This document shows, in pieces, positions 2,266 through 55,550 of a stretch of DNA of 64,000 nt; position 1 is the stretch's first letter, and every line of letters begins with the position of its first letter. The notes below the pieces were generated by a model, which had not been told where the DNA came from, did no database searches, and saw only the letters and a program-made list of their open reading frames with translations. Source of the DNA: Podarcis erhardii (taxonomy: Eukaryota); NCBI GenBank assembly GCA_964252035.1, contig OZ176203.1. One strand, given 5' to 3'. The translations under genes and the position numbers were made by a program.

Positions 2266-2412
<147 letters not shown>

Positions 2413-7790: not shown

Positions 7791-9072
7791 TTTTTCCAGA
7801 CACACTAAGTGTTATTCAAATCTTACTCATCATGCATATAAATATGGGGGATGCATTTGCTTAGGAAAAGCTTCTTTAACATGCTTCGTTGCATTTGCAG
7901 ATGCCCATCTAAAATTCCCCTGAAGTACTGTATCATTTTCTTGTTGCTTATTCAGGTTTTGAATAAAAACCTTTTCCCAGTATTTTATTCCTTCACGGCT
8001 GGCGTTTCAAGTCTAGGTGTTTACGTGCCCTGCAACTTTGGATTAATGGGTGCAGCAAGAGAACCACATCACCATGGCTACTGATAGTAAATCAATATGT
8101 AACAAACATCCTAAACATTTATTTTCTGGAGCACCAAAATTCATAAATGGATATTATTAAATCTCTCAGAAAGTGTGCAAGCATTAAGTGTTTCTTCCAT
8201 CAAGCAGCACAAGGGTCCTCTAAGCTTATGAAGACACTTAAATCTTTCCCCAAAAGTTGTTTTGGTTGGCTCAGGAGACAAGTACCAACACAGTTGGAAT
8301 CCTACAAGGCCAATGGGTAGAACAGCATCCCTAAAAAGACTAGGCACAGCCAGTAAAGAAACATCTTTGTCAGGTCACCTTACTGTTTCTTTTTCATCTG
8401 AAGAACTGAAAGCATGCTATGACTCAAGCACAGTTACACTATTTAACCTGCACTTCCAAAACCATAAGCTGTTGGCCCTTTGTTAACATTACATGATGGG
8501 AGGAGGCTTTTAAAAATAGGTTATGGTATAGCTGAAAAGCCTCTGTGATAGAGGAACTGGGTTACTCAGCACCTATCGTTCCAAACTTGTCCAATAAAAA
8601 ATGTTTCTCAAAGTAAACACAAGTGCATAAACTGATTTTAATATTGGATTTTTTATATTGCTGGAACCTAGCTTGGAACATTGTGGTTTGTTTATGGACA
8701 ACAAAGAGGGTGGGAGGGGAGACAACAAATGAACATTGGTTTGGAACAACTTGCAGTTTCTTTGCTCATCTGGAAGACAAATCCTGCTTGTCCAACAAGC
8801 AGGGCCGCCGACTTATAAAAAATATTGGGGGGGGGGGGCCATACCGGGGTCCTGCCCCGGGAAGTTTTCTAAGAGCCGCTCCCGGCCGTTGCTGCTGCTG
8901 CCGCCCGCCTCGTGGCCCCCTCGCCAGCTGAGGGAGGGAGAGACCGAGAAGGAGAGAGATGCGTGGTGGGCAAGGCAAGTGCCCGCCGCGCCTCGCCTCC
9001 CACCGCCCCTCGTGCCGGCCGCCCCCTCCCCTCCCTTCCCTGCGCGCACGCTCGCTCGCTCGCCCTCCTCAC

Positions 9073-9182
9073 CCCAGCTCTTGGCCGTTCACCCCAGGAA
9101 CTCGCCGCTGTTGGCGGTTGTAGATGAACCTCCGCCCCTCGGCCATAGACTGGCTGAAGGGCTTCTCCTCCTCCTTGGCCAT
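9073..9182 (-). pseudogene. ATP1B3: Captured, inactivated first coding exon of Na+/K+-ATPase beta-3 subunit
   Basis: ATG at 9182; removing one inserted base gives MAKEEEKPFSQSMAEGRRFIYN(P)NSGEFLG*TAKSW + G|gtgagg. Compare recalled human ATP1B3 [37 protein letters not shown], whose exon 1 also ends after 36 codons + 1 nt. Lesions: +1 insertion, TGA at the Arg codon, GGG at the Trp codon. Confidence 0.85.

Positions 9183-9207
<25 letters not shown>
9183..9207. repeat. (AG)n microsatellite followed by G11 run
   Basis: Direct reading; on the minus strand it lies immediately 5' of the captured ATP1B3 ATG. Confidence 0.95.
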
Positions 9208-9218
<11 letters not shown>

Positions 9219-10720
9219 CTGGAAAGAGAGAGGGAGCTCGGCGGTTCGCGGGCGGCGGTTTTTCCCCTGCCGAAACAACAGCGGCTCCTCAGAACCGCTA
9301 AGTAACTCTCCCTCAGGTGCCCGGCGGGAGAGCAGAAGAGAGGAAAAGGAAAGAGGGGCTGGGCCAGTCGCACGCACCGAGCAAAACTACTCGCGCCGCC
9401 TCTTTTACTACCGTAATAATTATTTGTTTTAACTCATTACTGAATGTATTTTAAAAGGTAACTATCGTCAAACAAGGAAAATAAAAAATACCAACATAAT
9501 TTTGTGATTTTACAAAGCATAATATAACTAATAATTTTCTTAAATTATTGGGGGGGGCAGAGCCCCCCCAAACGAATTTTTGAGGGGGCTTGGGCCCCCT
9601 CAGGCCCCATGGAGTCGGTGCCTATGCCAACAAGCCATGGTTAAAACAAATGGTTTGTGTAATGTCCAAATGAGGCCTATGCCAATTACACCCACAATGC
9701 TACTGAGCAATGCAAAAATGAACAGAAAGGTGTGTGGGGCTGGATAAGAGATTGGTCTGTTGTATATGCACCTGAAAGCCTATTGGTCACCACAGAGCCA
9801 TGTTTAAATAACAAAAGAAGTTTAAGGTGTTTTGTAGCACCTTATTATTATGTCAGGCTTTGGTGAAGTACAGTTTACCTGATTGGATCCTCAGTTTTTA
9901 AGTGTTTCTACATAGGTGTAGAAGGAATAAAAAGTTGCTGACTGTGAAAATTGTGAAGACATGCAAAATTGTTTGTAACAATTCAATTAGAGCTTAAAGT
10001 GTATGCAGAGTCAGTACAGCAACCATTCACAACAGTGGTAGCTGAAGACAAATGTGTTAAGATTATAGTGCTAAGCAAATGACACCTGTAGCAGGCCAGA
10101 AAGCCACTGTACTTGCCTATCTTAGTTGACACATCTGCATCTGGCTCACATACTGTAGCAAAACTGTTATAATGGGAACACAGAACAACACATACAACAT
10201 TTGCCTTGAGTAAGATGATTCTCTAGGGACACTGACAGAAACAATCTGAGATGCATATTGATGAAACTGAAGTATATAACAAAGCCTGAAAGTTCCTTCT
10301 ACGAATGTCAATTCAACTAATTGCTCCGTCCAAACCACCAGTAGAAAAACAAAGGATCACATTACCTTTTAAGAACTATCCTAATCGTATTAATCCCATA
10401 AACAAAGAGTAGTATTTTAGAGCATCTTTTCCTTTAGTATTCCCAAAAGGTACTGTGTTAAAATGGAAGTCAGTGAGCTATGAAATTAGCACCTTGCTTG
10501 TGTTTTTGTTGCCTTTTATTCTGCTGCCTTAAAAAGGAAGCTTAATTCTTATACCCAGACATCAATATTAAGTCAGCCTGAAATATACATGCATATTCCC
10601 AAAATGCGTGCATATTATACATAGAACATATCGTGCAATCTTAGGCAGAGCAGAAATTAACAGCTAAAGAACATGACTTATTTTTGAGGAATTGGAGTAT
10701 ATAATCACCTAGCTGTAGAC

Positions 10721-11008: not shown

Positions 11009-13990
11009 CTGTAATCACTGTGATCCATGCCCCTGATAACACAGGATTTCTCTCTTTTATACTGCTTTTATACTGCTAAAATAGATGCTTGAAGAGGTAC
11101 CTGCAACATGATACTGTTTAGTGGTATTTTTTTTTAAAAAAAAAAACCCAATAGAAACAGGTCTAAAATTACACAGCCCAGCTCCAGTTGATGAGAATCT
11201 TCACCTTACTAATCATCCAGACCATGTCACTAATCACATCTGCCCAACAACTGAAGAAGCAACCCTAGCATTTAGCAGCTGCTGCGGAATTGAACAGTTC
11301 ATACTACATTCCCAAGGGGAGGGCTGGCGGAAACTGCATTCCCACTGAGCCTAGGGAACCTTGAACAGGAAGATCAAGAAAGAGATAGGAATAAACAGCT
11401 GCTCAGCTTGCACTTAACATTCTTTGAAGCACTTGGAAATTCCTTCACCTAGTGCTTGGTGTTCCATAGTTTTGCATTGTTTTAAGCCGGTCTCTCACTA
11501 TGCTGGGGCTGATGGAAGTTGCAGTTTAAAACATCTGGGAGGCATAGAGGCTGGTGAAGGCTTTAAGAACTGTATTTTGTACACACATCGAGGCCTTTCC
11601 TGGAACCTGTTACACAAGAAGTTGTACCCTTCTGTAAATGTAAACCTTCCCAAACACGAACTGTACACAGTATTTGCTCAAAGTCAAACTAACAAGGACT
11701 GCAATCTTCCACATGAACCTGTCTGACTGCTTAGATTCTACTGGTGCCAATGGAAAGTTTTTTTTAAAGTCTTGTAGTTGCAAATTGAGGGGGATCACAA
11801 CTGAGAAGGGGTGAACCTCCCCTTTCTACAAACTGGGATCTGATGACAATCACTCCCCTCCCCAACTCACATGAAATTAAAAGAAAACATGAGATGTAGC
11901 TACATGCTATGCATTAAGAGTAACATGTAGTTTGTCTGCTCTCTGGACTTTGCACAGGTTGCCCCTTCTATCTGCTTTTGACTAACTTGCTTAAGCCAAT
12001 TTGCTTAATTAGTTTTTGGTTTAGCGTTGTGTCCAACTGCAACCACCAGGTATACTATATTGTTATCCTGTTGACTCACAACACAATGACCAACACACAA
12101 ATACTGCTTTACATTTTAAGGTTTGAATTTTTTGTGAGGAAGGAACTCTCCTGACATCAGTATTTTTGTGCAAAGGTAGTTGCTTACTCATAAAAAGGTT
12201 GATTTTGCCATTAATGTATATTCTGCAGTTAATGCAGAAACAAAACTGAACACTGAGATTTTGCAGCTCTGATACCACTTGCATAAATGATTCGTACATG
12301 ATTAACTGCATGTTACTTTGAAATAATTATCTTGTTCTCTACTTCTCTCTTGAAGCTCCAACCATGCCACCAATATTGAGATGAAATGGAAATTTAACAA
12401 ACCATCTACTCCATTTTCTCCAGTCCGATGTTACACCATTTCCTTTTTCCACACTAAACCAGTGATGGGCTACGTGGCCCTTCAGCTGCAGCTGAAATCT
12501 AGCAATCTGGATCTTGCAATTTTTTCCAGGTCTATCTTATTTACATAATTATTATCTTATCCCACTTTATAGATTCCCAGTAAGAAATGATAATATTGCA
12601 CGAGCTTAAAAAGAAATATTACTGGTCATACAGCTTGGTTTCGTGCAAACAACTGCGCAATTTAACAAATAGTTCTCTCACATGCTCTAGTTCCTATTGC
12701 ATCTCTAGTTTTCTGACTGGCTCTATAACCCAGATACAATGACTAACACCCCAACCAGCCATGACACTAGGAATATACCCTTTCTGTAGAAGCACACCTG
12801 TCACTGCTGCAAAAACATACCCTAGAACCTGTGCTGAGAATGTTACATGTGGATGAATGAAAAAGAAGTGTTATTATATGCTTGACCTTCAAACGTCAAC
12901 ATATCCATCTTGTAAAAATATTGCACGTTTTCACGTCAACCAAGTGCTGTAACCTTCCCTGGGGAGATGTTCTGAGCTAAGTGATTATATCAGCTGAAAG
13001 CTGGCAGGTGCCATCATTGTGCTGCTTTATGGAAATCTACTAAGAATTGCCAGATTCCAAAATGTGTCATTTCACATAATGCAGTCCTGCACAAAAACAT
13101 TCCATTAGTTCTCCGCTCTTTTTTCTCTCTCCAAGTGTTTCAACAACAAGAGCTGCTAAGCATAAAATATTAGCTTTTTCTATTGCTACTACAGCAAGGC
13201 ACAAAGAGCCATCTGAGAAATCTTTTGTCATAATGAAAATGGAACGGACGGTTTCAAATATTTGATCATAATCCTAACTTCTGACGAGGAAGAGCTAAAT
13301 TCCTGCAAATCGACATTAATGAACTGGTGCTTGGAGGCTGAATGTGTCAACTTTTGAAGGTCAAGAGCACAAACAGCCAGGCTTTCTATAAAACTGAAAA
13401 AGGGAAAGCAAGTAATACAGAAAATATGGTGTCCAAAATTTCACTGTGTTTAAATGCATAGTTTGCACTTGCATCTTTTTAAAACAGGAGCCACTAACTT
13501 GGGGGGGGGGGCGTGGTACGGGGTTAATGCCTTTGACACTATGATCCTGATTTTAAAAATTTGCCTCCTCCAATTGGATGGAAGGAGGTGTTAACTGGGG
13601 CCAACAACAGCTTCTCTTTTAGCACAAGGATACGATGGGACAATTTTCATTAGGTTGGAAAGTTCAGCCTTTTCTCCAGCCCTACCACAGTCCCAATTAT
13701 CACCACCTTGCTCCACATGGCTGCTGCTATTGTTCTTCTCAAGGTGCAACTATAAGCCATGCATTTAATGTAATGGGAGGGATTCAACGTCATGCTAAGT
13801 TAAAGCCCCTTAGCAGTGTGTCAGTTGCACAAGAGACATAGCTGTCAATTTACAGATTGAAAACAGCCTCAAAAAAGAAAAAAGAAAAAAAAAAGGGATC
13901 AGCAGCCAAAATAAGGGATTTTAGCTTTAGCTTATACAGAAATCCGCCACTCATGGAGCCATGCAGCTTCTGCTGCGACTGACTGTGTTT

Positions 13991-14030
13991 TGCAGGGGGT
14001 TGGACTAGATGATCCTAAGGGTCTACAATT
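13991..14030 (+). mobile_element. CR1 LINE 3'-end fragment inside the hAT element
   Basis: tgcagggggttggactagatgatcctaagggtc..tacaatt matches the CR1 3' terminus; the same motif occurs inverted at 45592-45660. Confidence 0.75.
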
Positions 14031-14210
14031 CCAACCAAAGACGAGTGGCAGACAACACTGATGAATGCCGTTGAGATGGCAAAGCTTACAGGCAGAATGG
14101 GGAAAGCTTATAATTTATTTGAAAAGCTATTGTAAAGAGTTACATACATTGGTAGGATTGACAGAAAACTTGTAGCAAATATTTGAACTATGGATGGACT
14201 AATGATTTAT
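14028..14210 (+). mobile_element. L1-clade ORF2 C-terminal fragment inside the hAT element
   Basis: Translates IPTKDEWQTTLMNAVEMAKLTGRM, then in another frame QAEWGKLIIYLKSYCKELHTLVGL, resembling recalled squamate L1 ORF2 C-termini; internal deletion likely. Confidence 0.6.
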
Positions 14211-14249
14211 AAAACTAGAGTTATGAAAGGGATGCAGAGGGGGAAATCA

Positions 14250-14700
14250 CTACATTAAGATGCTGCACTGGTTGGAGGGTATGCTAAGCAGCACGTCGGG
14301 GCTGCCGTCGTCCTGGCGCGAGGAGTTCCATCGGCCCTTCCCCACCCGAGAGAGAGGGAAGGAGACTCTCGCCCACGCTGCCTGCGAGCCCGGCATGAGG
14401 CGGTTGCAGTGCCATGGCAGCCGCTGAAGCGCCGCCTTTCTGCGTCCTTCCCCTTCCCCTCTTCTTCCTCCTCCCTCAGGCTGCCTCCTCAGCCGCTGCT
14501 GCTGCCACCTCCGGCTTCCCCTGGCAGCACAGCGGAAGTCTCGCAAGAGAGGGGCTGCCTGCCCGCCTGCCGCTACCCGTCTCCGCACGACGCGCCCCTG
14601 AGGGGGAAAAGGGAGAAACAGAGACGTGGCAGCTCATGCACGCGCTCTCTCTCGCTCTCTTGAGGCGGAGGACCCCGAGCCACTGCTTCCCTCCTGAGCC
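14250..14700. promoter_or_regulatory. CpG-island-like fragment, probably a captured promoter/5' UTR of unknown origin
   Basis: CpG-dense in an AT-rich, CpG-poor intron. GCGGAAGT (ETS) overlaps TCTCGCAAGA (one mismatch to the BANP/ZBTB33 TCTCGCGAGA motif) at about 14532-14547. Palindromic gccATGGc at 14411-14418 gives a Kozak ATG on both strands. Confidence 0.55.
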
Positions 14701-17700
14701 GTGGGAGCATGAAACCCAAGAAATTTAAGGGACATCATCAATCTGGGACAGCAGTGGGAAACGGTGCTGGGATAAGGGAGTTTCCCACCAAATAAGGGAT
14801 GGTTGACAGCTATGACAAGAGAAGGAACAGGAAGCCGGCGTGGTTTCTGTGACTGGTTGCACAACAGGTATGTTGCAGCCATGATACAACCTGTTGCACA
14901 GCCAGCTTCTGCTAGTACAACTGTTGCACTGGATTTCAGCCTGGAGACCCATTACTCTTACTCTAGTGCAACAGCTCTTGCATTAGCAGTCATAGAACCA
15001 AGAATCTGGGCCTAAGTAGTTTCATCTTAAGTTCCATTGAACCTAAGTGTACAGTTCAGAAGCACCTTTATATTAAAGCCCCACTGATATGAATGAGACA
15101 AAAAGAACACCTATTATAGGTGCTGCATTTGGAAACATGAGAAGAAGGCTGCCAATTTAGCTTTCTTCCTTTCTATCTGCAGCAAGAGTTTTGACAAAGC
15201 CATCTGCTGGTGTGCATGTTACATCATACCAGACAGTGAAAGGACCATACCAGATGCAGTTTGTCTGAAGAGACCATCTGGTCAGAAAATCTGAAAAACT
15301 TCAAAGGACAGAAACTTGTAGACCTCCATCTTGTCAATAGCTGAGGAAAAGTGATTATGAACCTTCTGGGTCATTCCTGTAGGCCCCCTGCCATGGGTTG
15401 GCTAATGCTGCCCACCACTCTGGCATGCCCCCACTGCCACCATCTCATTGCACCAGCGCTGTGTCCACTACCAATACTAGGTTATCTCATAACTTAAATG
15501 TAGTTCTGTTGACCATGCCGAGACTTAATGCATTCTTTATTTAAAAGCAAAATGGAGCTCTGTAAGGCTTGTCTCTCTCAATCACACAGCTAAGTGGAGA
15601 CAGAACCAATTTATGAGAGCACAATAAGCTAAATCCACAGTGACATTAAAATTCTGAGACACAATTAGTTAATCTTGTCTCATCGATCAGGCAGTAGATA
15701 GGAAAGCTACTATCCGGATGTATGGCTCTTCAGAGGGAAAGCTCATTTGAAAGGAGAGAGGCGACTCCAACTAAGGAGAAAAGCCAATAACTGCATCAAG
15801 AAACAAGCTAGCAATAGCCACATCTGAGTTGCATGGACAACCCTTAAATGGAATATCCTCAATGTGGATTTATTTATTTTTTGTTTACACCTGTGCTTTT
15901 TTAGGCCCAGAGCACATATTAAAGTTGCTGCCCATTTTTAGGTATTTGATCCCAGGTAAATTTACTTGGAAGGCTGGCAGTTCCATTTCAATCAATGGGA
16001 TCTTTACATGTAAATATTACAAGGTCCTTCAGCAAAGCTACAGAAATGCTTCCACATTTGGCATTACACTTCATTTGTCCCAATTAGGAAATTAACATTT
16101 CAAAACATTACAACACAGGCATGTTAATACTTAGTAGGTGATTTGAACTTCAAAGGTGAATAAGTGTTTTCCTAAGCTACTCATTAATGACCATCCTCAT
16201 ACTGATACTACATGTGAGGACTAGCCCCACCCATACCCCTGTGTAATAAAGGAGATGGCAGCAAAAACCATTCTGAAACTTGGATATTGAATGAAAAGAT
16301 TAATGGGGTAACCTTTAGAGAGTATCTAGCGTAGAGCTAGTTCTGTCTTTGAATCAGATGAAAGTGAAATACATTCATCATGTGAAATGACCTGACATTT
16401 TACAGTACTAGCAATTTTGACAACATTGCCGCTTGTATGAATGGCATATTTTAAAACCATAACTGATTTTATCTATAAATAAGGGAAGAAAGAGAAATAA
16501 TCTCTCACCTTTTAGCTGCAGCTAAAGCTAAATATTGGACACAAAAAACAAGATACCACAAGTACCTATTTCTTACTAAACGATTGGGATCCTACTAGTG
16601 CAGTTTCTAAATTCATTATTCAATTTAGAGATGTATCTACAAGAGATTTAGGCTCCAAGCTTACACCCATGTACCTGGGAGTAAATCAATATGGTCTGAC
16701 TGTGATGTCAGGTTCATGAGGAAGATACTATTCTTTGAAAGAAAATATTAAAGATTACAAGTGAGATCAAAGGTTATGCTAGTTGATGCAATGGGATTTT
16801 CCTTTCTGCCTGTAATTCCACCTTCCCTCCAAATCTGCTTGAGGGCTCCCCAACTTTCCATTGCAGAGGGTCTGGGGGAGAGAAGGGAGGGAAAGTCCCA
16901 TTGTTGAAGTGTCTGTCGCACAAACAGAACACAATTACTGCATGCCACCCAATATTATATCAGGAAAGTCTTGTTAGACAAGACTATTGTAACACTGTGT
17001 CGAATTCAACTTAACAGTTGCCCTACCACCCAGCACAATGGGACTTCCCCACCCCCCACTACCACCCTCCCAAATTGGCTTGGGGAGGGGAGAGAGGTTC
17101 AGGAGAACCCCCATAACAATGTGCAGGGGCAAGAGAGAGGATATTGAAGTGACAGAACTGACAGAACAATTGTAATAACATGACATGGAATTCTACCCAC
17201 TGCTTCCAGGTGTAAAGCAACGCAAAACTGGCATTTCTCTTCACTGATATAAATCAGGATCTCTTATAAATGCAAAATAGTCACAGAATTAGTGTACAGT
17301 TTTCACAGATTACAGGTTTCGATTTTTAATTGTTTAAAGAATTTCTGCTTTCCACACTCTAGCCCCATTAACTCGAAGCAAAACCTGTAATCTAATAAAC
17401 TCAATCGATATTGCTGGATCTTTTGCTCCGTGCAAGATGCCTGTCATACTGTATAAGCCATTTCACTAAGGAAAAGAGCTAAGGAATCAGTCAAGTGTTG
17501 AAGGGCTTCTCTGCAACAAATCCCAAAAGGGCAATGCTGAAGGCCAGCACAAAAATGGATCATGGTATCTGACATGAGAGCAGACATACGTCTGCTAGTC
17601 AAATAGTAATTCTCACCCCTGTGAAAAAGCCAAGCATCTAACTGCATAAACGGACTGAATGAACTTCAGCAGCTCTTGAACTAAAATGTAAATGTAGCTG

Positions 17701-53656: not shown

Positions 53657-55550
53657 TAATAATAATAATAATAATAATTTATTATTTGTACCCCGCCCAT
53701 CTGGCTGGGTTTCCCCAGCCACTCTGGGCGGCTTCCATAAAAACCAGAAATACATTAAAATATCACAGATTAAAAACTTCCCTGAACAGGGCTGCCTTAA
53801 GATGTCTTCTGAATGTCAGGTAGTTATTTATCGCTTTGACATCTGATGGGAGGACGTTCCACAAGGCGGGTGCCACTACCGAGAAGGCCCTCTGCCTGGT
53901 TCCCTGTAGCTTTGCTTCTCGTAATGAGGGAACCGCCAGAAGGCCCTCGGCGCTGGACCTCAGCGTCCGGGCAGAACGATGGGGGTGGAGACGCTCCTTC
54001 AGGTATATTGGGCTGAGGCCGTTTAGGGCTTTAAAGGTCAACACCAGCACTTTGAATTGTGCTCGGAAACGTACTGGGAGCCAATGTAGGTCTTTCAAGA
54101 CCGGTGTTATGTGGTCTCGGCGGCTGCCCCCAGTCACCAGTCTAGCTGCCGCATTCTGGATTAGTTGTAGTTTCCAAGTCACCTTCAAAGGTAGCCCCAC
54201 GTAGAGCGCATTGCAGTAGTCCAAGCGGGAGATAACTAGAGCATGCACCACTCTGGCGAGACAGTCCGCGGGCAGGTAGGGTCTCAGCCTGCGTACCAGG
54301 TGGAGTTGGTAGACAGCTGCCCTGGATACAGAATTGACCTGCGCCTCCATGGACAGCTGTGAGTCCAAAATGACTCCCAGGCTGCGCACCTGGTCCTTCA
54401 GGGGCACAGTTACCCCATTCAGGATCAGGGAGTCCTCCACACCAGCCCGCCCCCTGTCCCCCAAAAACAGTACTTCTGTCTTGTCAGGATTCAACCTCAA
54501 TCCATTAGCCGCCATCCATCCTCCAACCGCCTCCAGGCACTCACACAGGACCTTCACCGCCTTCACTGGTTCTGATTTGAAAGAGAGGTAGAACTGGGTA
54601 TCATCTGCATATTGATGGACACCCAGTCCAAACCCCCTGATGATCTCTCCCAGCGGCTTCATATAGATGTTAAAAAGCATGGGGGAGAGGACGGAGCCCT
54701 GAGGCACCCCACAAGTGAGGGCCCAGGGGTCTGAACACTCATCCCCCACCACCACTTTCTGAACACGGCCCAGGAGGAAGGAGCGAAACCACTGTATAAC
54801 AGTGCCCCCAGCTCCCAGCCCCTCTAGACGGTCCAGAAGGATGTTATGGTCGATTGTATCAAAGGCCGCTGAGAGATCCAGCAGAACTAGGAAACAGCTC
54901 TCACCTTTGTCCCTAGCTCGCCGGAGATCATCAACCAGCGCGACCAAGGCAGTTTCAGTCCCATGATGAGGCCTGAATCCCGATTGGAAGGGATCCAAAT
55001 GGTCCGCATCCTCCAGGCGTGCCTGGAGTTGTTCAGCAACCACGCGCTCAATCACCTTGCCCAAGAATGGAAGATTTGAGACTGGGCGATAGTTGGCCAT
55101 ACTGGCCGGGTCTAAAGATGGTTTTTTAAGAAGCGGTTTGATGACCGCCTCTTTCAGCGGATCTGGGAATGCTCCCTCACAGAGAGAAGCATTCACCACC
55201 CCGCAGAGCCCATCGCCCAGCCCTTCCCGGCTTGCTTTTATTAGCCAGGATGGGCAAGGATCCAGGAGACAGGTGGTTGGTTTCACGCGTCCAAGCAGCC
55301 TGTCCACATCCTCGGGGGTAATGGATTGAAATCGATTCCATGCAACTTGACCAGACAGAGCTCTAGCACTCTCCCGCCCCAGCCCTGCTCCCACGGTGGT
55401 GTCTAGCTCCTTCCGAATATGAGTGATTTTATCTGCAAAAAACTTTGCAAAATCGTTGCAGGAGATCTTGGGGTCTTTACAAAGCCCCGGTGGTAAAGGT
55501 GGTTCCGTTAAATTACGAACCACCTGAAAAAGTCTCCTGCTACTATTTTC
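53657..55550 (-). mobile_element. L2-clade LINE, 5'-truncated, young
   Basis: (ATT)n 3' tail at 53654-53678, 3' hairpin, stop-free RT frame to about 55550; candidate TSD CTGTAA (53651-53656, 55551-55556). Confidence 0.95.
53763..55550 (-). CDS. L2 ORF2 reverse transcriptase, N-terminally truncated (no endonuclease domain)
   Basis: NYRPVSNLPFLGKVIERVV, QSGFRPHHGTETAL, LLDLSAAFDTIDH, GVPQGSVLSPMLFNIY, YADDTQFY, LNPDKTEVL: non-LTR RT motifs of the CR1/L2 group. The frame continues upstream of the track start to about ENSSRRLFQVVRNL. Confidence 0.93.
   Translation of the reverse strand, partial: ENSSRRLFQVVRNLTEPPLPPGLCKDPKISCNDFAKFFADKITHIRKELDTTVGAGLGRESARALSGQVAWNRFQSITPEDVDRLLGRVKPTTCLLDPCPSWLIKASREGLGDGLCGVVNASLCEGAFPDPLKEAVIKPLLKKPSLDPASMANYRPVSNLPFLGKVIERVVAEQLQARLEDADHLDPFQSGFRPHHGTETALVALVDDLRRARDKGESCFLVLLDLSAAFDTIDHNILLDRLEGLGAGGTVIQWFRSFLLGRVQKVVVGDECSDPWALTCGVPQGSVLSPMLFNIYMKPLGEIIRGFGLGVHQYADDTQFYLSFKSEPVKAVKVLCECLEAVGGWMAANGLRLNPDKTEVLFLGDRGRAGVEDSLILNGVTVPLKDQVRSLGVILDSQLSMEAQVNSVSRAAVYQLHLVRRLRPYLPADCLARVVHALVISRLDYCNALYVGLPLKVTWKLQLIQNAAARLVTGGSRRDHITPVLKDLHWLPVRFRAQFKVLVLTFKALNGLSPIYLKERLHPHRSARTLRSSAEGLLAVPSLREAKLQGTRQRAFSVVAPALWNVLPSDVKAINNYLTFRRHLKAALFREVFNL

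What the first reader, a model, noticed from the sequence alone, without database searches (positions are those of the whole stretch)
8800..9626. Pack-hAT element that captured the first exon and intron start of ATP1B3 (Na+/K+-ATPase beta-3)
Seen: exact 8-bp TSD CCAACAAG and imperfect TIRs enclose a CpG-island-like cargo. On the minus strand it reads 5' UTR-like sequence, then ATG at 9182 giving MAKEEEKPFSQSMAEGRRFIYN(+1 nt)NSGEFLG*TAKSW-G, then donor G|GTGAGG at 9073/9072 and about 200 bp of GC-rich intron-like DNA. Known (recalled): ATP1B3 starts [37 protein letters not shown], with exon 1 ending after 36 codons + 1 nt, the length seen here once the inserted base is removed. Inference: the donor and intron show DNA-level capture (Pack-MULE/Pack-TIR style), not retrotransposition. 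The ORF track hides this because of the frameshift. A hAT family spreading an essential gene's CpG island in a lizard would be a gene-shuffling system I do not know to be described.
Basis: partly seen in the sequence, partly recalled or inferred. Interest (0 to 1): 0.85.

Follow-up and report, generated by a model that had tools for sequence, protein, structure and literature searches.

The report
Lizard hAT transposon carrying ATP1B3 start
An 827-base cut-and-paste (hAT-type) transposon in an intron of a lizard APP gene carries a stolen, now decaying copy of the 5' leader, first coding exon and probably the intron start of the sodium-pump gene ATP1B3; the hybrid has multiplied to roughly 20-45 copies in several related lizards, a known kind of event that is rarely seen at this copy number in vertebrates.

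Summary
Window 8800-9626 is an insertion with an exact 8-bp target-site duplication, CCAACAAG. Contigs from two related species join 8791 directly to 9627 and carry one copy of that 8-mer, so they have the empty site.

The ends belong to a non-autonomous hAT-like family present in thousands of copies. About 550 bp inside (about 8873-9422) is cargo. On the minus strand, 9397-9073 matches a spliced ATP1B3 mRNA contig from a relative, which then continues into ATP1B3 exon 2 (GLILLFYLVF). In the window a GTGAGG donor and 200 bp of CpG-rich DNA follow instead. That points to capture at the DNA level.

Cargo-backbone junction contigs have about 25-43 times single-copy depth in two species, one of which lacks this insertion. 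The hybrid was therefore formed once, amplified, and was still transposing recently.

This copy is dead. It has a private extra base, a private CGA>TGA stop, and 5 of 7 private substitutions are CpG transitions.

Pack-TIR/Pack-hAT capture in animals is already described (Tan et al. 2021), so this is a new, unusually amplified member, not a new system. The scan has noted a second ATP1B3 copy and other gene-start-carrying hATs elsewhere in this genome.

The parts
8792..8799 (.). Left copy of the 8-bp target-site duplication CCAACAAG
   Evidence: D16. The empty-site contigs X4 rec 17 and X9 rec 24 join 8791 to 9627, with 9 letters fitting both sides.
8800..8872 (.). Left end of the non-autonomous hAT-like backbone. 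The terminal inverted repeat CAGGGCCGCCGACT is at 8800-8813, followed by an A-run/G-run subterminal unit.
   Evidence: Summed depth at 8788-8848 is 364k against 87 in the flank in X1. Twelve to sixteen contigs per run in X1 and X4 (fewer in X9 and X15) lose homology exactly at 8800. The usual backbone continues differently after 8872 (ATTTTAGATGAAAATTAGTGA). All.
8873..9072 (-). Cargo, intron-like part: 200 bp of GC-rich (0.75), CpG-rich (o/e 0.84) DNA that starts with the donor GTGAGG.
   Evidence: X4 rec 20 and X9 rec 28 span the exon/intron boundary at 21-22 times single-copy depth. Homology to native ATP1B3 intron 1 is inferred, not tested.
9073..9182 (-). Cargo, coding part of ATP1B3 exon 1. 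It is 110 nt here and 109 nt (36 codons + 1 nt) in all other copies. It is broken by an extra base at 9115 and a TGA at 9091-9089.
   Evidence: In one search, base 9115 is left out in every other contig, and 9091 A>G, 9137 C>A and 9167 C>T are seen in all or nearly all others.
9183..9397 (-). Cargo, ATP1B3 5' untranslated leader, including a (CT)n/(C)n tract.
   Evidence: X15 rec 10 (a 1770-nt contig) starts at 9397 and runs colinearly to 9072.
9398..9422 (-). Cargo, about 25 bp upstream of the 5' end of the relative's mRNA contig. It is either promoter-proximal DNA or filler.
   Evidence: The Pack-specific junction contigs X1 rec 5 (9233-9434) and X4 rec 22 (9376-9452) cross it. Ordinary backbone contigs diverge before 9423.
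9423..9626 (.). Right end of the hAT-like backbone. It is AT-rich inside, and the terminal repeat ...AGTCGGTGCCTATG is at 9613-9626.
   Evidence: Summed depth is 200k-580k against 73-87 in X1. Fifteen contigs lose homology exactly at 9626, with unlike flanks.
9627..9634 (.). Right copy of the target-site duplication CCAACAAG

Best explanation
This is a Pack-type non-autonomous hAT transposon.

A short hAT-like element with thousands of copies lost its middle and acquired about 550 bp of the genomic 5' CpG island of ATP1B3. The cargo comprises about 25 bp upstream, the 215-nt leader, the 109-nt first coding exon with its splice donor, and about 200 bp that is most likely intron 1. The likely route is template switching during repair or replication; this step is inferred.

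The hybrid kept both termini, so a hAT transposase supplied in trans could move it. It was formed once, before the sampled lizard species split, and amplified to roughly 20-45 copies.

The copy in this window inserted, with an 8-bp duplication, into an APP intron in the same orientation as APP. This happened after its lineage separated from two relatives that still have the empty site.

At this locus the cargo is a methylated, decaying passenger with no coding capacity.
For: - Insertion shown: exact TSD, and empty-site contigs in two related organisms that skip 8792-9626 (835 bases) and keep one TSD copy (table 5).
- Boundaries shown: many contigs diverge exactly at 8800 and at 9626 into unlike flanks (table 7).
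- Cargo identity shown: ATP1B3 residues 1-37 at E=2.4e-9. A relative's 1770-nt contig matches 9397-9072 and then reads GLILLFYLVF, which is ATP1B3 residues 37-46. It is therefore a spliced mRNA that defines the exon end at the window's GTGAGG donor.
- Amplification: single contigs crossing the cargo-backbone junction or the exon-intron boundary have k-mer depth 3482 against about 80 (X1), 302-308 and 266 against 12.3 (X4), and 255 against 12 (X9) (table 8). X4 and X9 lack this insertion yet hold the hybrid, so other copies exist and this one is a later transposition.
- Recent capture: the family consensus differs from the relative's mRNA at only 2 of 326 positions (table 3).
- Decay: the frameshift, the stop and 5 of 7 private substitutions at CpG sites.
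- Host: the APP exon at 2266-2412 on the minus strand matches APP at E=2.3e-23.
Against: - The native ATP1B3 locus was never obtained, so homology of 8873-9072 to intron 1, and of 9398-9422 to the promoter, is inferred only.
- Copy numbers are ratios of contig k-mer depths, which the tool warns are not true copy numbers.
- Distinct TSDs of other cargo-bearing copies were not seen directly. The loose ends mostly reflect the whole backbone family.
- No transposase was found, so the hAT assignment rests on the 8-bp TSD and the CAG/CAT termini.
- The right terminus CATAG does not fit the hAT YARNG rule (as recalled) at its third base.
Confidence: 0.85

Rival explanations
1. In-situ gap filling. 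A plain hAT copy already sat at this APP site, and a double-strand break inside it was repaired with ATP1B3 sequence. This is the transposition-independent route that Tan et al. favour for single-copy animal Pack-TIRs.
For: It is the commonest origin of animal Pack-TIRs in the one survey read. The possible 2-nt overlap (AA, 8871-8872) between the backbone and a candidate parental contig would suit microhomology-mediated repair (loose ends at 8871 and 8872).
Against: The relatives have no transposon at all at this site (clean empty site). The identical cargo-backbone junctions occur at about 25 times depth in a species that lacks this insertion (X4 rec 22). Gap filling may explain how the hybrid first arose, but not this copy.
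Confidence: 0.04
2. RNA-mediated copy. The ATP1B3 piece is a retrocopy of a (pre-)mRNA that landed between two transposon fragments.
For: The cargo starts within about 25 bp of the 5' end of the relative's mRNA contig.
Against: The exon is followed by its donor GTGAGG and 200 bp of non-exon DNA instead of exon 2. There is no poly(A). The 8-bp TSD flanks the inverted-repeat ends, not the cargo.
Confidence: 0.03
3. The GC-rich middle is an original part of the transposon family, and the resemblance to ATP1B3 is either convergent or reflects the lizard gene taking its first exon from the transposon.
For: The cargo is multi-copy and sits in the same place in all cargo-bearing copies.
Against: The exon is conserved with human ATP1B3 residues 1-37, and its continuation with residues 38-46, so it predates the element. 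The backbone is about 100 times more abundant than the cargo, and ordinary copies continue with different sequence at 8872 and 9423.
Confidence: 0.02
4. Same origin, but the family is more than a passenger. The dispersed cassette (CpG-island leader + ATG exon + splice donor) acts at some sites as an alternative first exon or promoter. Here it would do so in sense orientation upstream of an APP exon.
For: The cargo lies on the same strand as APP, and the donor is intact in sequence. Tan et al. report that many Pack-TIRs are transcribed as chimeras.
Against: This copy shows CpG decay typical of methylated DNA and has lost its reading frame. No RNA evidence for this locus was obtained.
Confidence: 0.1

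Closest known systems
Animal Pack-TIRs, specifically Pack-hAT elements (Tan et al. 2021, Nat Commun 12:4280, PMC8277862), e.g. Pack-hAT-N8_XT carrying 291 bp of the CAPSL 5'UTR in Xenopus tropicalis
   Same: A non-autonomous hAT with intact ends carries a few hundred bp of a host gene's GC-rich 5' end. It is multi-copy through repeated transposition. There is no orthologous cargo-less element at the site in the outgroup.
   Different: Copy number here is about 20-45 by depth. The frog family shown in their main figure has three transposition events, another frog case is credited with five (supplementary figure 18), and the survey found only four multi-copy families in 100 genomes. The host is a squamate; the survey's single lizard (anoCar2) had none. 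The cargo includes a coding first exon with its splice donor.
Plant Pack-MULEs / Pack-TYPE transposons (rice; cited in PMC8277862 and PMC8903248)
   Same: Capture of genomic gene fragments (introns included) between TIRs, amplification with distinct TSDs, and a preference for GC-rich 5' gene ends (discussion passage).
   Different: A different superfamily (Mutator, with 9-11 bp TSDs from my own knowledge, against the 8-bp hAT-type TSD here), and a different kingdom.
Maize Ds-type non-autonomous hAT elements (PMC3260210)
   Same: Short terminal repeats plus subterminal motifs suffice for mobilisation in trans. The internal sequence is heterogeneous and may be unrelated to the autonomous element (abstract).
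   Different: Those internal sequences are mostly deletion derivatives or of unknown origin, not an identified host gene start.

Membership tests
hAT superfamily (non-autonomous member) | 8-bp target-site duplication | tested here: met
   CCAACAAG on both sides. A single copy is present in the empty sites of two relatives.
hAT superfamily (non-autonomous member) | Short terminal inverted repeats beginning YARNG (rule recalled from the literature) | tested here: inconclusive
   The left end CAGGG fits. The right end CATAG departs at position 3. The two 14-nt ends match at 10 of 14 positions. No majority variant was reported at the termini across the family.
hAT superfamily (non-autonomous member) | Mobilised by a transposase with BED/RNase-H-like/hAT dimerisation domains | not testable with these tools
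   There is no transposase in the element or the window. The long ORF at 53766-55523 is a reverse transcriptase. The source genome could not be searched.
Pack-TIR (as defined by Tan et al. 2021) | Transposon ends flank an internal sequence derived from a host gene | tested here: met
   The backbone ends are present in thousands of copies. The inside matches ATP1B3 protein residues 1-37 and a relative's spliced ATP1B3 mRNA contig over 326 nt.
Pack-TIR (as defined by Tan et al. 2021) | A parental copy exists that is not itself associated with the transposon | tested here: inconclusive
   The relative's mRNA continues into exon 2, so a normal ATP1B3 gene exists. Its genomic surroundings were not seen. 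Three protein searches made to reach a lizard ATP1B3 protein, and through it the locus, found nothing usable.
Multicopy (transposed) Pack-TIR | Several copies at different sites with different TSDs | tested here: inconclusive
   Junction-spanning contigs reach 21-43 times single-copy depth, including in species that lack this insertion. An unchecked scan note reports a second copy on another piece of the genome. Individual TSDs of other cargo copies were not seen.
Processed pseudogene / retrocopy | Spliced exons, a poly(A) tail, and a TSD flanking the copy itself | tested here: not met
   The donor and non-exon DNA follow exon 1, there is no exon 2 and no poly(A).

The most novel reading that the evidence does not exclude
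This lizard lineage may host an active hAT system that repeatedly picks up CpG-island gene starts and amplifies each to tens of copies. ATP1B3 is the case here. Unchecked scan notes list GNAL, CENPW, SPR and RAPGEFL1 elsewhere in the same genome, and a second CpG-rich hAT lies 4 kb away in this window. That would be a vertebrate counterpart of rice Pack-MULEs. Cassettes of promoter, first exon and donor would be seeded into introns and would sometimes create new first exons or chimeric transcripts.
Probability: 0.3. Interest if true: 0.75.

Novelty: new member of a known kind. Interest (0 to 1): 0.55.

Why it matters
Gene-fragment capture by DNA transposons is well known in plants. In animals it has so far looked rare, mostly single-copy and mostly independent of transposition.

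Here a captured gene start has ridden a hAT element to tens of copies in several lizard species and was still jumping after they diverged. This shows that the transposition-dependent, amplifying route operates in an amniote.

It also gives a concrete family with which to study three things: how capture happens, whether dispersed CpG-island/first-exon/donor cassettes alter host transcription, and how the genome silences them. This copy shows CpG decay.

For annotation, such copies can be mistaken for promoters, CpG islands or ATP1B3 paralogues.

Tried and rejected
**Attempts to reach a lizard ATP1B3 protein or the native locus (all failed)**
- The search for homologous proteins with the 91-aa intron-frame ORF and with the 102-aa leader+exon ORF, region 63-102, found nothing.
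- The search of protein representatives with the 37-aa window peptide returned only a spurious bacterial repeat protein.
- These blanks say nothing about absence, because of the query-length limits and the short informative stretch.

**Searches for other copies or prior work**
- No other copy of the family was found in the window, with patterns at up to 3 mismatches or with blastn at word size 9.
- The search of earlier findings by sequence was blank, which per the operators means nothing.
- No paper on squamate Pack-hATs was found.

**Readings rejected**
- Retrocopy, in-situ gap filling at this locus, cargo as an original part of the family, and assembly artefact. Independent runs of four organisms reproduce the parts.

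- One search used a typed query that joined the exon-1 reading (X at the breaks) to nine residues translated from a relative's contig.
- I report this as a slip. The tool result (residues 38-46 of chain 9kcg_B = LILLFYLVF) is cited with that caveat. Without it, the exon-2 identity rests on my recall of ATP1B3.

Full report
**1. What is in the sequence**

- Window 8800-9626 (827 bp) is flanked by CCAACAAG at 8792-8799 and at 9627-9634 (D16).
- The ends read CAGGGCCGCCGACT on the + strand and CATAGGCACCGACT for the reverse complement of the right end. They match at 10 of 14 positions.
- The inside is GC- and CpG-rich. Positions 8872-9422 have GC 0.66 and CpG o/e 0.79; the flanks have 0.38-0.39 and 0.10-0.11.
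- On the minus strand an ATG at 9182 opens MAKEEEKPFSQSMAEGRRFIYN. After one extra base the frame continues NSGEFLG, then a TGA at 9091-9089, then TAKSWG, and it ends at G|GTGAGG (9073|9072).
- Read through with X at the two breaks, this matches residues 1-37 of ATP1B3 (PDB 9kcg_B) at E=2.4e-9. H/K-ATPase beta chains reach E about 0.02 and beta-1 chains E about 1.3. Pfam Na_K-ATPase gives E=5.7e-5, just under its cut-off.

**2. It is a true insertion**

I laid Logan contigs of four public runs on 8300-10100 at 80% likeness or more (runs found).

- In organisms B (X4, 3286-nt contig) and F (X9, 2229-nt contig), one contig runs through both flanks and joins 8791 to 9627. It skips 835 bases, and 9 letters fit either side.
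- Both relatives therefore have the empty site with a single CCAACAAG. Their flanks differ from the window by about 2% and 3%.
- In organism A (X1, the best holder) a contig crosses the right junction (9601-10100), so the insertion is present there.
- Many contigs per run lose homology exactly at 8800 and at 9626 and continue into mutually unlike sequence (agreement about 0.4). This fixes the element's boundaries and shows many copies elsewhere.

**3. Backbone and cargo**

- Summed depth in X1 is 73-87 in the flanks, 364,000 over 8788-8848 and 200,000-580,000 over 9398-9641.
- The ends therefore belong to a family with copy numbers in the thousands. Depth is not an exact copy number.
- Ordinary family members continue after 8872 with ATTTTAGATGAAAATTAGTGA, and they have other sequence before 9423.
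- So about 8873-9422 is cargo that replaces the usual middle.
- No other member of the family lies in the window.

**4. The cargo is the genomic start of ATP1B3**

- A 1770-nt contig of organism H (X15, probably RNA) starts at 9397 and runs colinearly to 9072, with 6 mismatches and 12 gap letters.
- It then continues into unlike sequence. The reverse complement of that sequence reads, in frame after the split glycine codon, LILLFYLVF.
- One search shows that ATP1B3 residues 38-46 are exactly that.
- The contig is therefore a spliced ATP1B3 mRNA.
- In the window a consensus donor GTGAGG and 200 bp of CpG-rich DNA follow at that very point, where the mRNA has exon 2. Contigs of B and F span that boundary (9053-9171 and 9049-9171).
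- A processed RNA template is thus excluded. Capture of genomic DNA is the economical reading.
- I could not compare 8873-9072 with the native intron, because the native locus was out of reach. That step is inferred.

**5. One capture, then amplification**

- Single contigs that cross the cargo-backbone junction or the exon-intron boundary with 0-3 mismatches have these k-mer depths (table 8):

| Run (organism) | Contig span | Depth | Single-copy depth |
|---|---|---|---|
| X1 (A) | 9233-9434 | 3482 | about 80 |
| X4 (B) | 9376-9452 | 302 | 12.3 |
| X4 (B) | 9235-9405 | 308 | 12.3 |
| X4 (B) | 9053-9171 | 266 | 12.3 |
| X9 (F) | 9049-9171 | 255 | 12 |

- That is roughly 20-45 copies of the same hybrid in species that lack this particular insertion.
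- The hybrid was therefore formed before these species split, and the window copy is a later transposition of it.
- The family consensus differs from organism H's mRNA at only two positions (9131, 9263) in 326, so the capture is evolutionarily recent.
- An unchecked scan note reports a second ATP1B3-carrying hAT on another piece of this genome.

**6. State of this copy**

- Every other contig, mRNA included, lacks the base at 9115. That restores NPNSGEFLG.
- Every other contig has G at 9091 (CGA, Arg, where this copy has TGA). The other contigs, bar a minority copy in X1, have A at 9137 (Trp where this copy has Gly) and T at 9167 (Lys where this copy has Glu).
- Five of the seven private substitutions (9041, 9048, 9091, 9318, 9591) are CpG to TpG/CpA changes.
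- This copy has therefore been evolving like methylated, unconstrained DNA, not like a protected CpG island.

**7. Context**

- The minus strand at 2266-2412 encodes an APP exon that matches human APP at E=2.3e-23, residues 118-158 of a 770-residue chain.
- The element thus sits in the APP intron upstream of that exon, with the captured exon in the same orientation as APP.
- Whether its donor is ever spliced to APP exons could not be tested.
- About 4 kb away (13837-14814) lies a second hAT-like element. It has a perfect 12-bp TIR, CATAGCTGTCAA, an exact TSD, ACAAGAGA, and its own CpG-rich block.

**8. Mechanism**

- Shown: the hybrid structure, its mobility (TSD plus empty sites), its multi-copy state and the decay of this copy.
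- Inferred: acquisition by template switching during repair or replication. A possible 2-nt overlap, AA at 8871-8872, between the backbone and a candidate parental contig in X4 is suggestive only.
- Inferred: mobilisation in trans by a hAT transposase, which was not found.
- Inferred: the intronic origin of 8873-9072.

**9. Comparison with what is known**

- Tan et al. 2021 (PMC8277862) defined animal Pack-TIRs. They found 370 in 100 genomes, 208 on hAT backbones and mostly single-copy.
- They found four multi-copy families: three in the frog and one in the alligator. The family shown in their main figure has three transposition events, another frog case has five, and the multi-copy families tend to carry GC-rich cargo.
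- Their only lizard, anoCar2, had none. I found no paper on squamate Pack-hATs.
- This is therefore a new member of a known kind. It is notable for its copy number, its recent activity and its host group. It is not a new system.
- Unchecked scan notes describe similar elements carrying the starts of GNAL, CENPW, SPR and RAPGEFL1 in the same genome. I did not test them. They motivate the more novel reading that this lineage has a Pack-MULE-like capture system.

**10. Verdict**

- Observation: confirmed.
- Confidence in the Pack-hAT explanation: 0.85.
- Interest: 0.55.

Noticed in passing
window 13829-14822: A second non-autonomous hAT-like element lies in the same APP intron. It has a perfect 12-bp TIR CATAGCTGTCAA/TTGACAGCTATG, an exact 8-bp TSD ACAAGAGA, and a GC/CpG-rich block at about 14270-14690 with no recognisable coding start. 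Beyond CATAG, its termini differ from those of the ATP1B3 element.
   Followed up: partly
window 2266-2412 (minus strand): An APP exon encoding [38 protein letters not shown], matching human APP at E=2.3e-23. It fixes the host gene and its strand.
   Followed up: yes
window 53766-55523 (minus strand): A 586-aa open reading frame with a reverse-transcriptase domain (RVT_1, E=1.6e-37), presumably a LINE copy.
   Followed up: partly
window 8800-8872, from contigs of other copies (tables 5c and 7): In many other family members the left end carries a tandem second unit (…GGGGGCCCATACCGACTTATAAAAAATA…) after the G-run. The motif CCGACT therefore recurs subterminally and may be the transposase-binding repeat. 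The window copy has only one full unit.
   Followed up: no
window 8871-9019, contig X4 rec 19: A 429-nt contig of organism B matches the intron-like cargo without mismatches. It then runs on past the cargo breakpoint at 8871 into GC-rich unlike sequence. It may be the parental ATP1B3 intron, but its sequence could not be retrieved.
   Followed up: no
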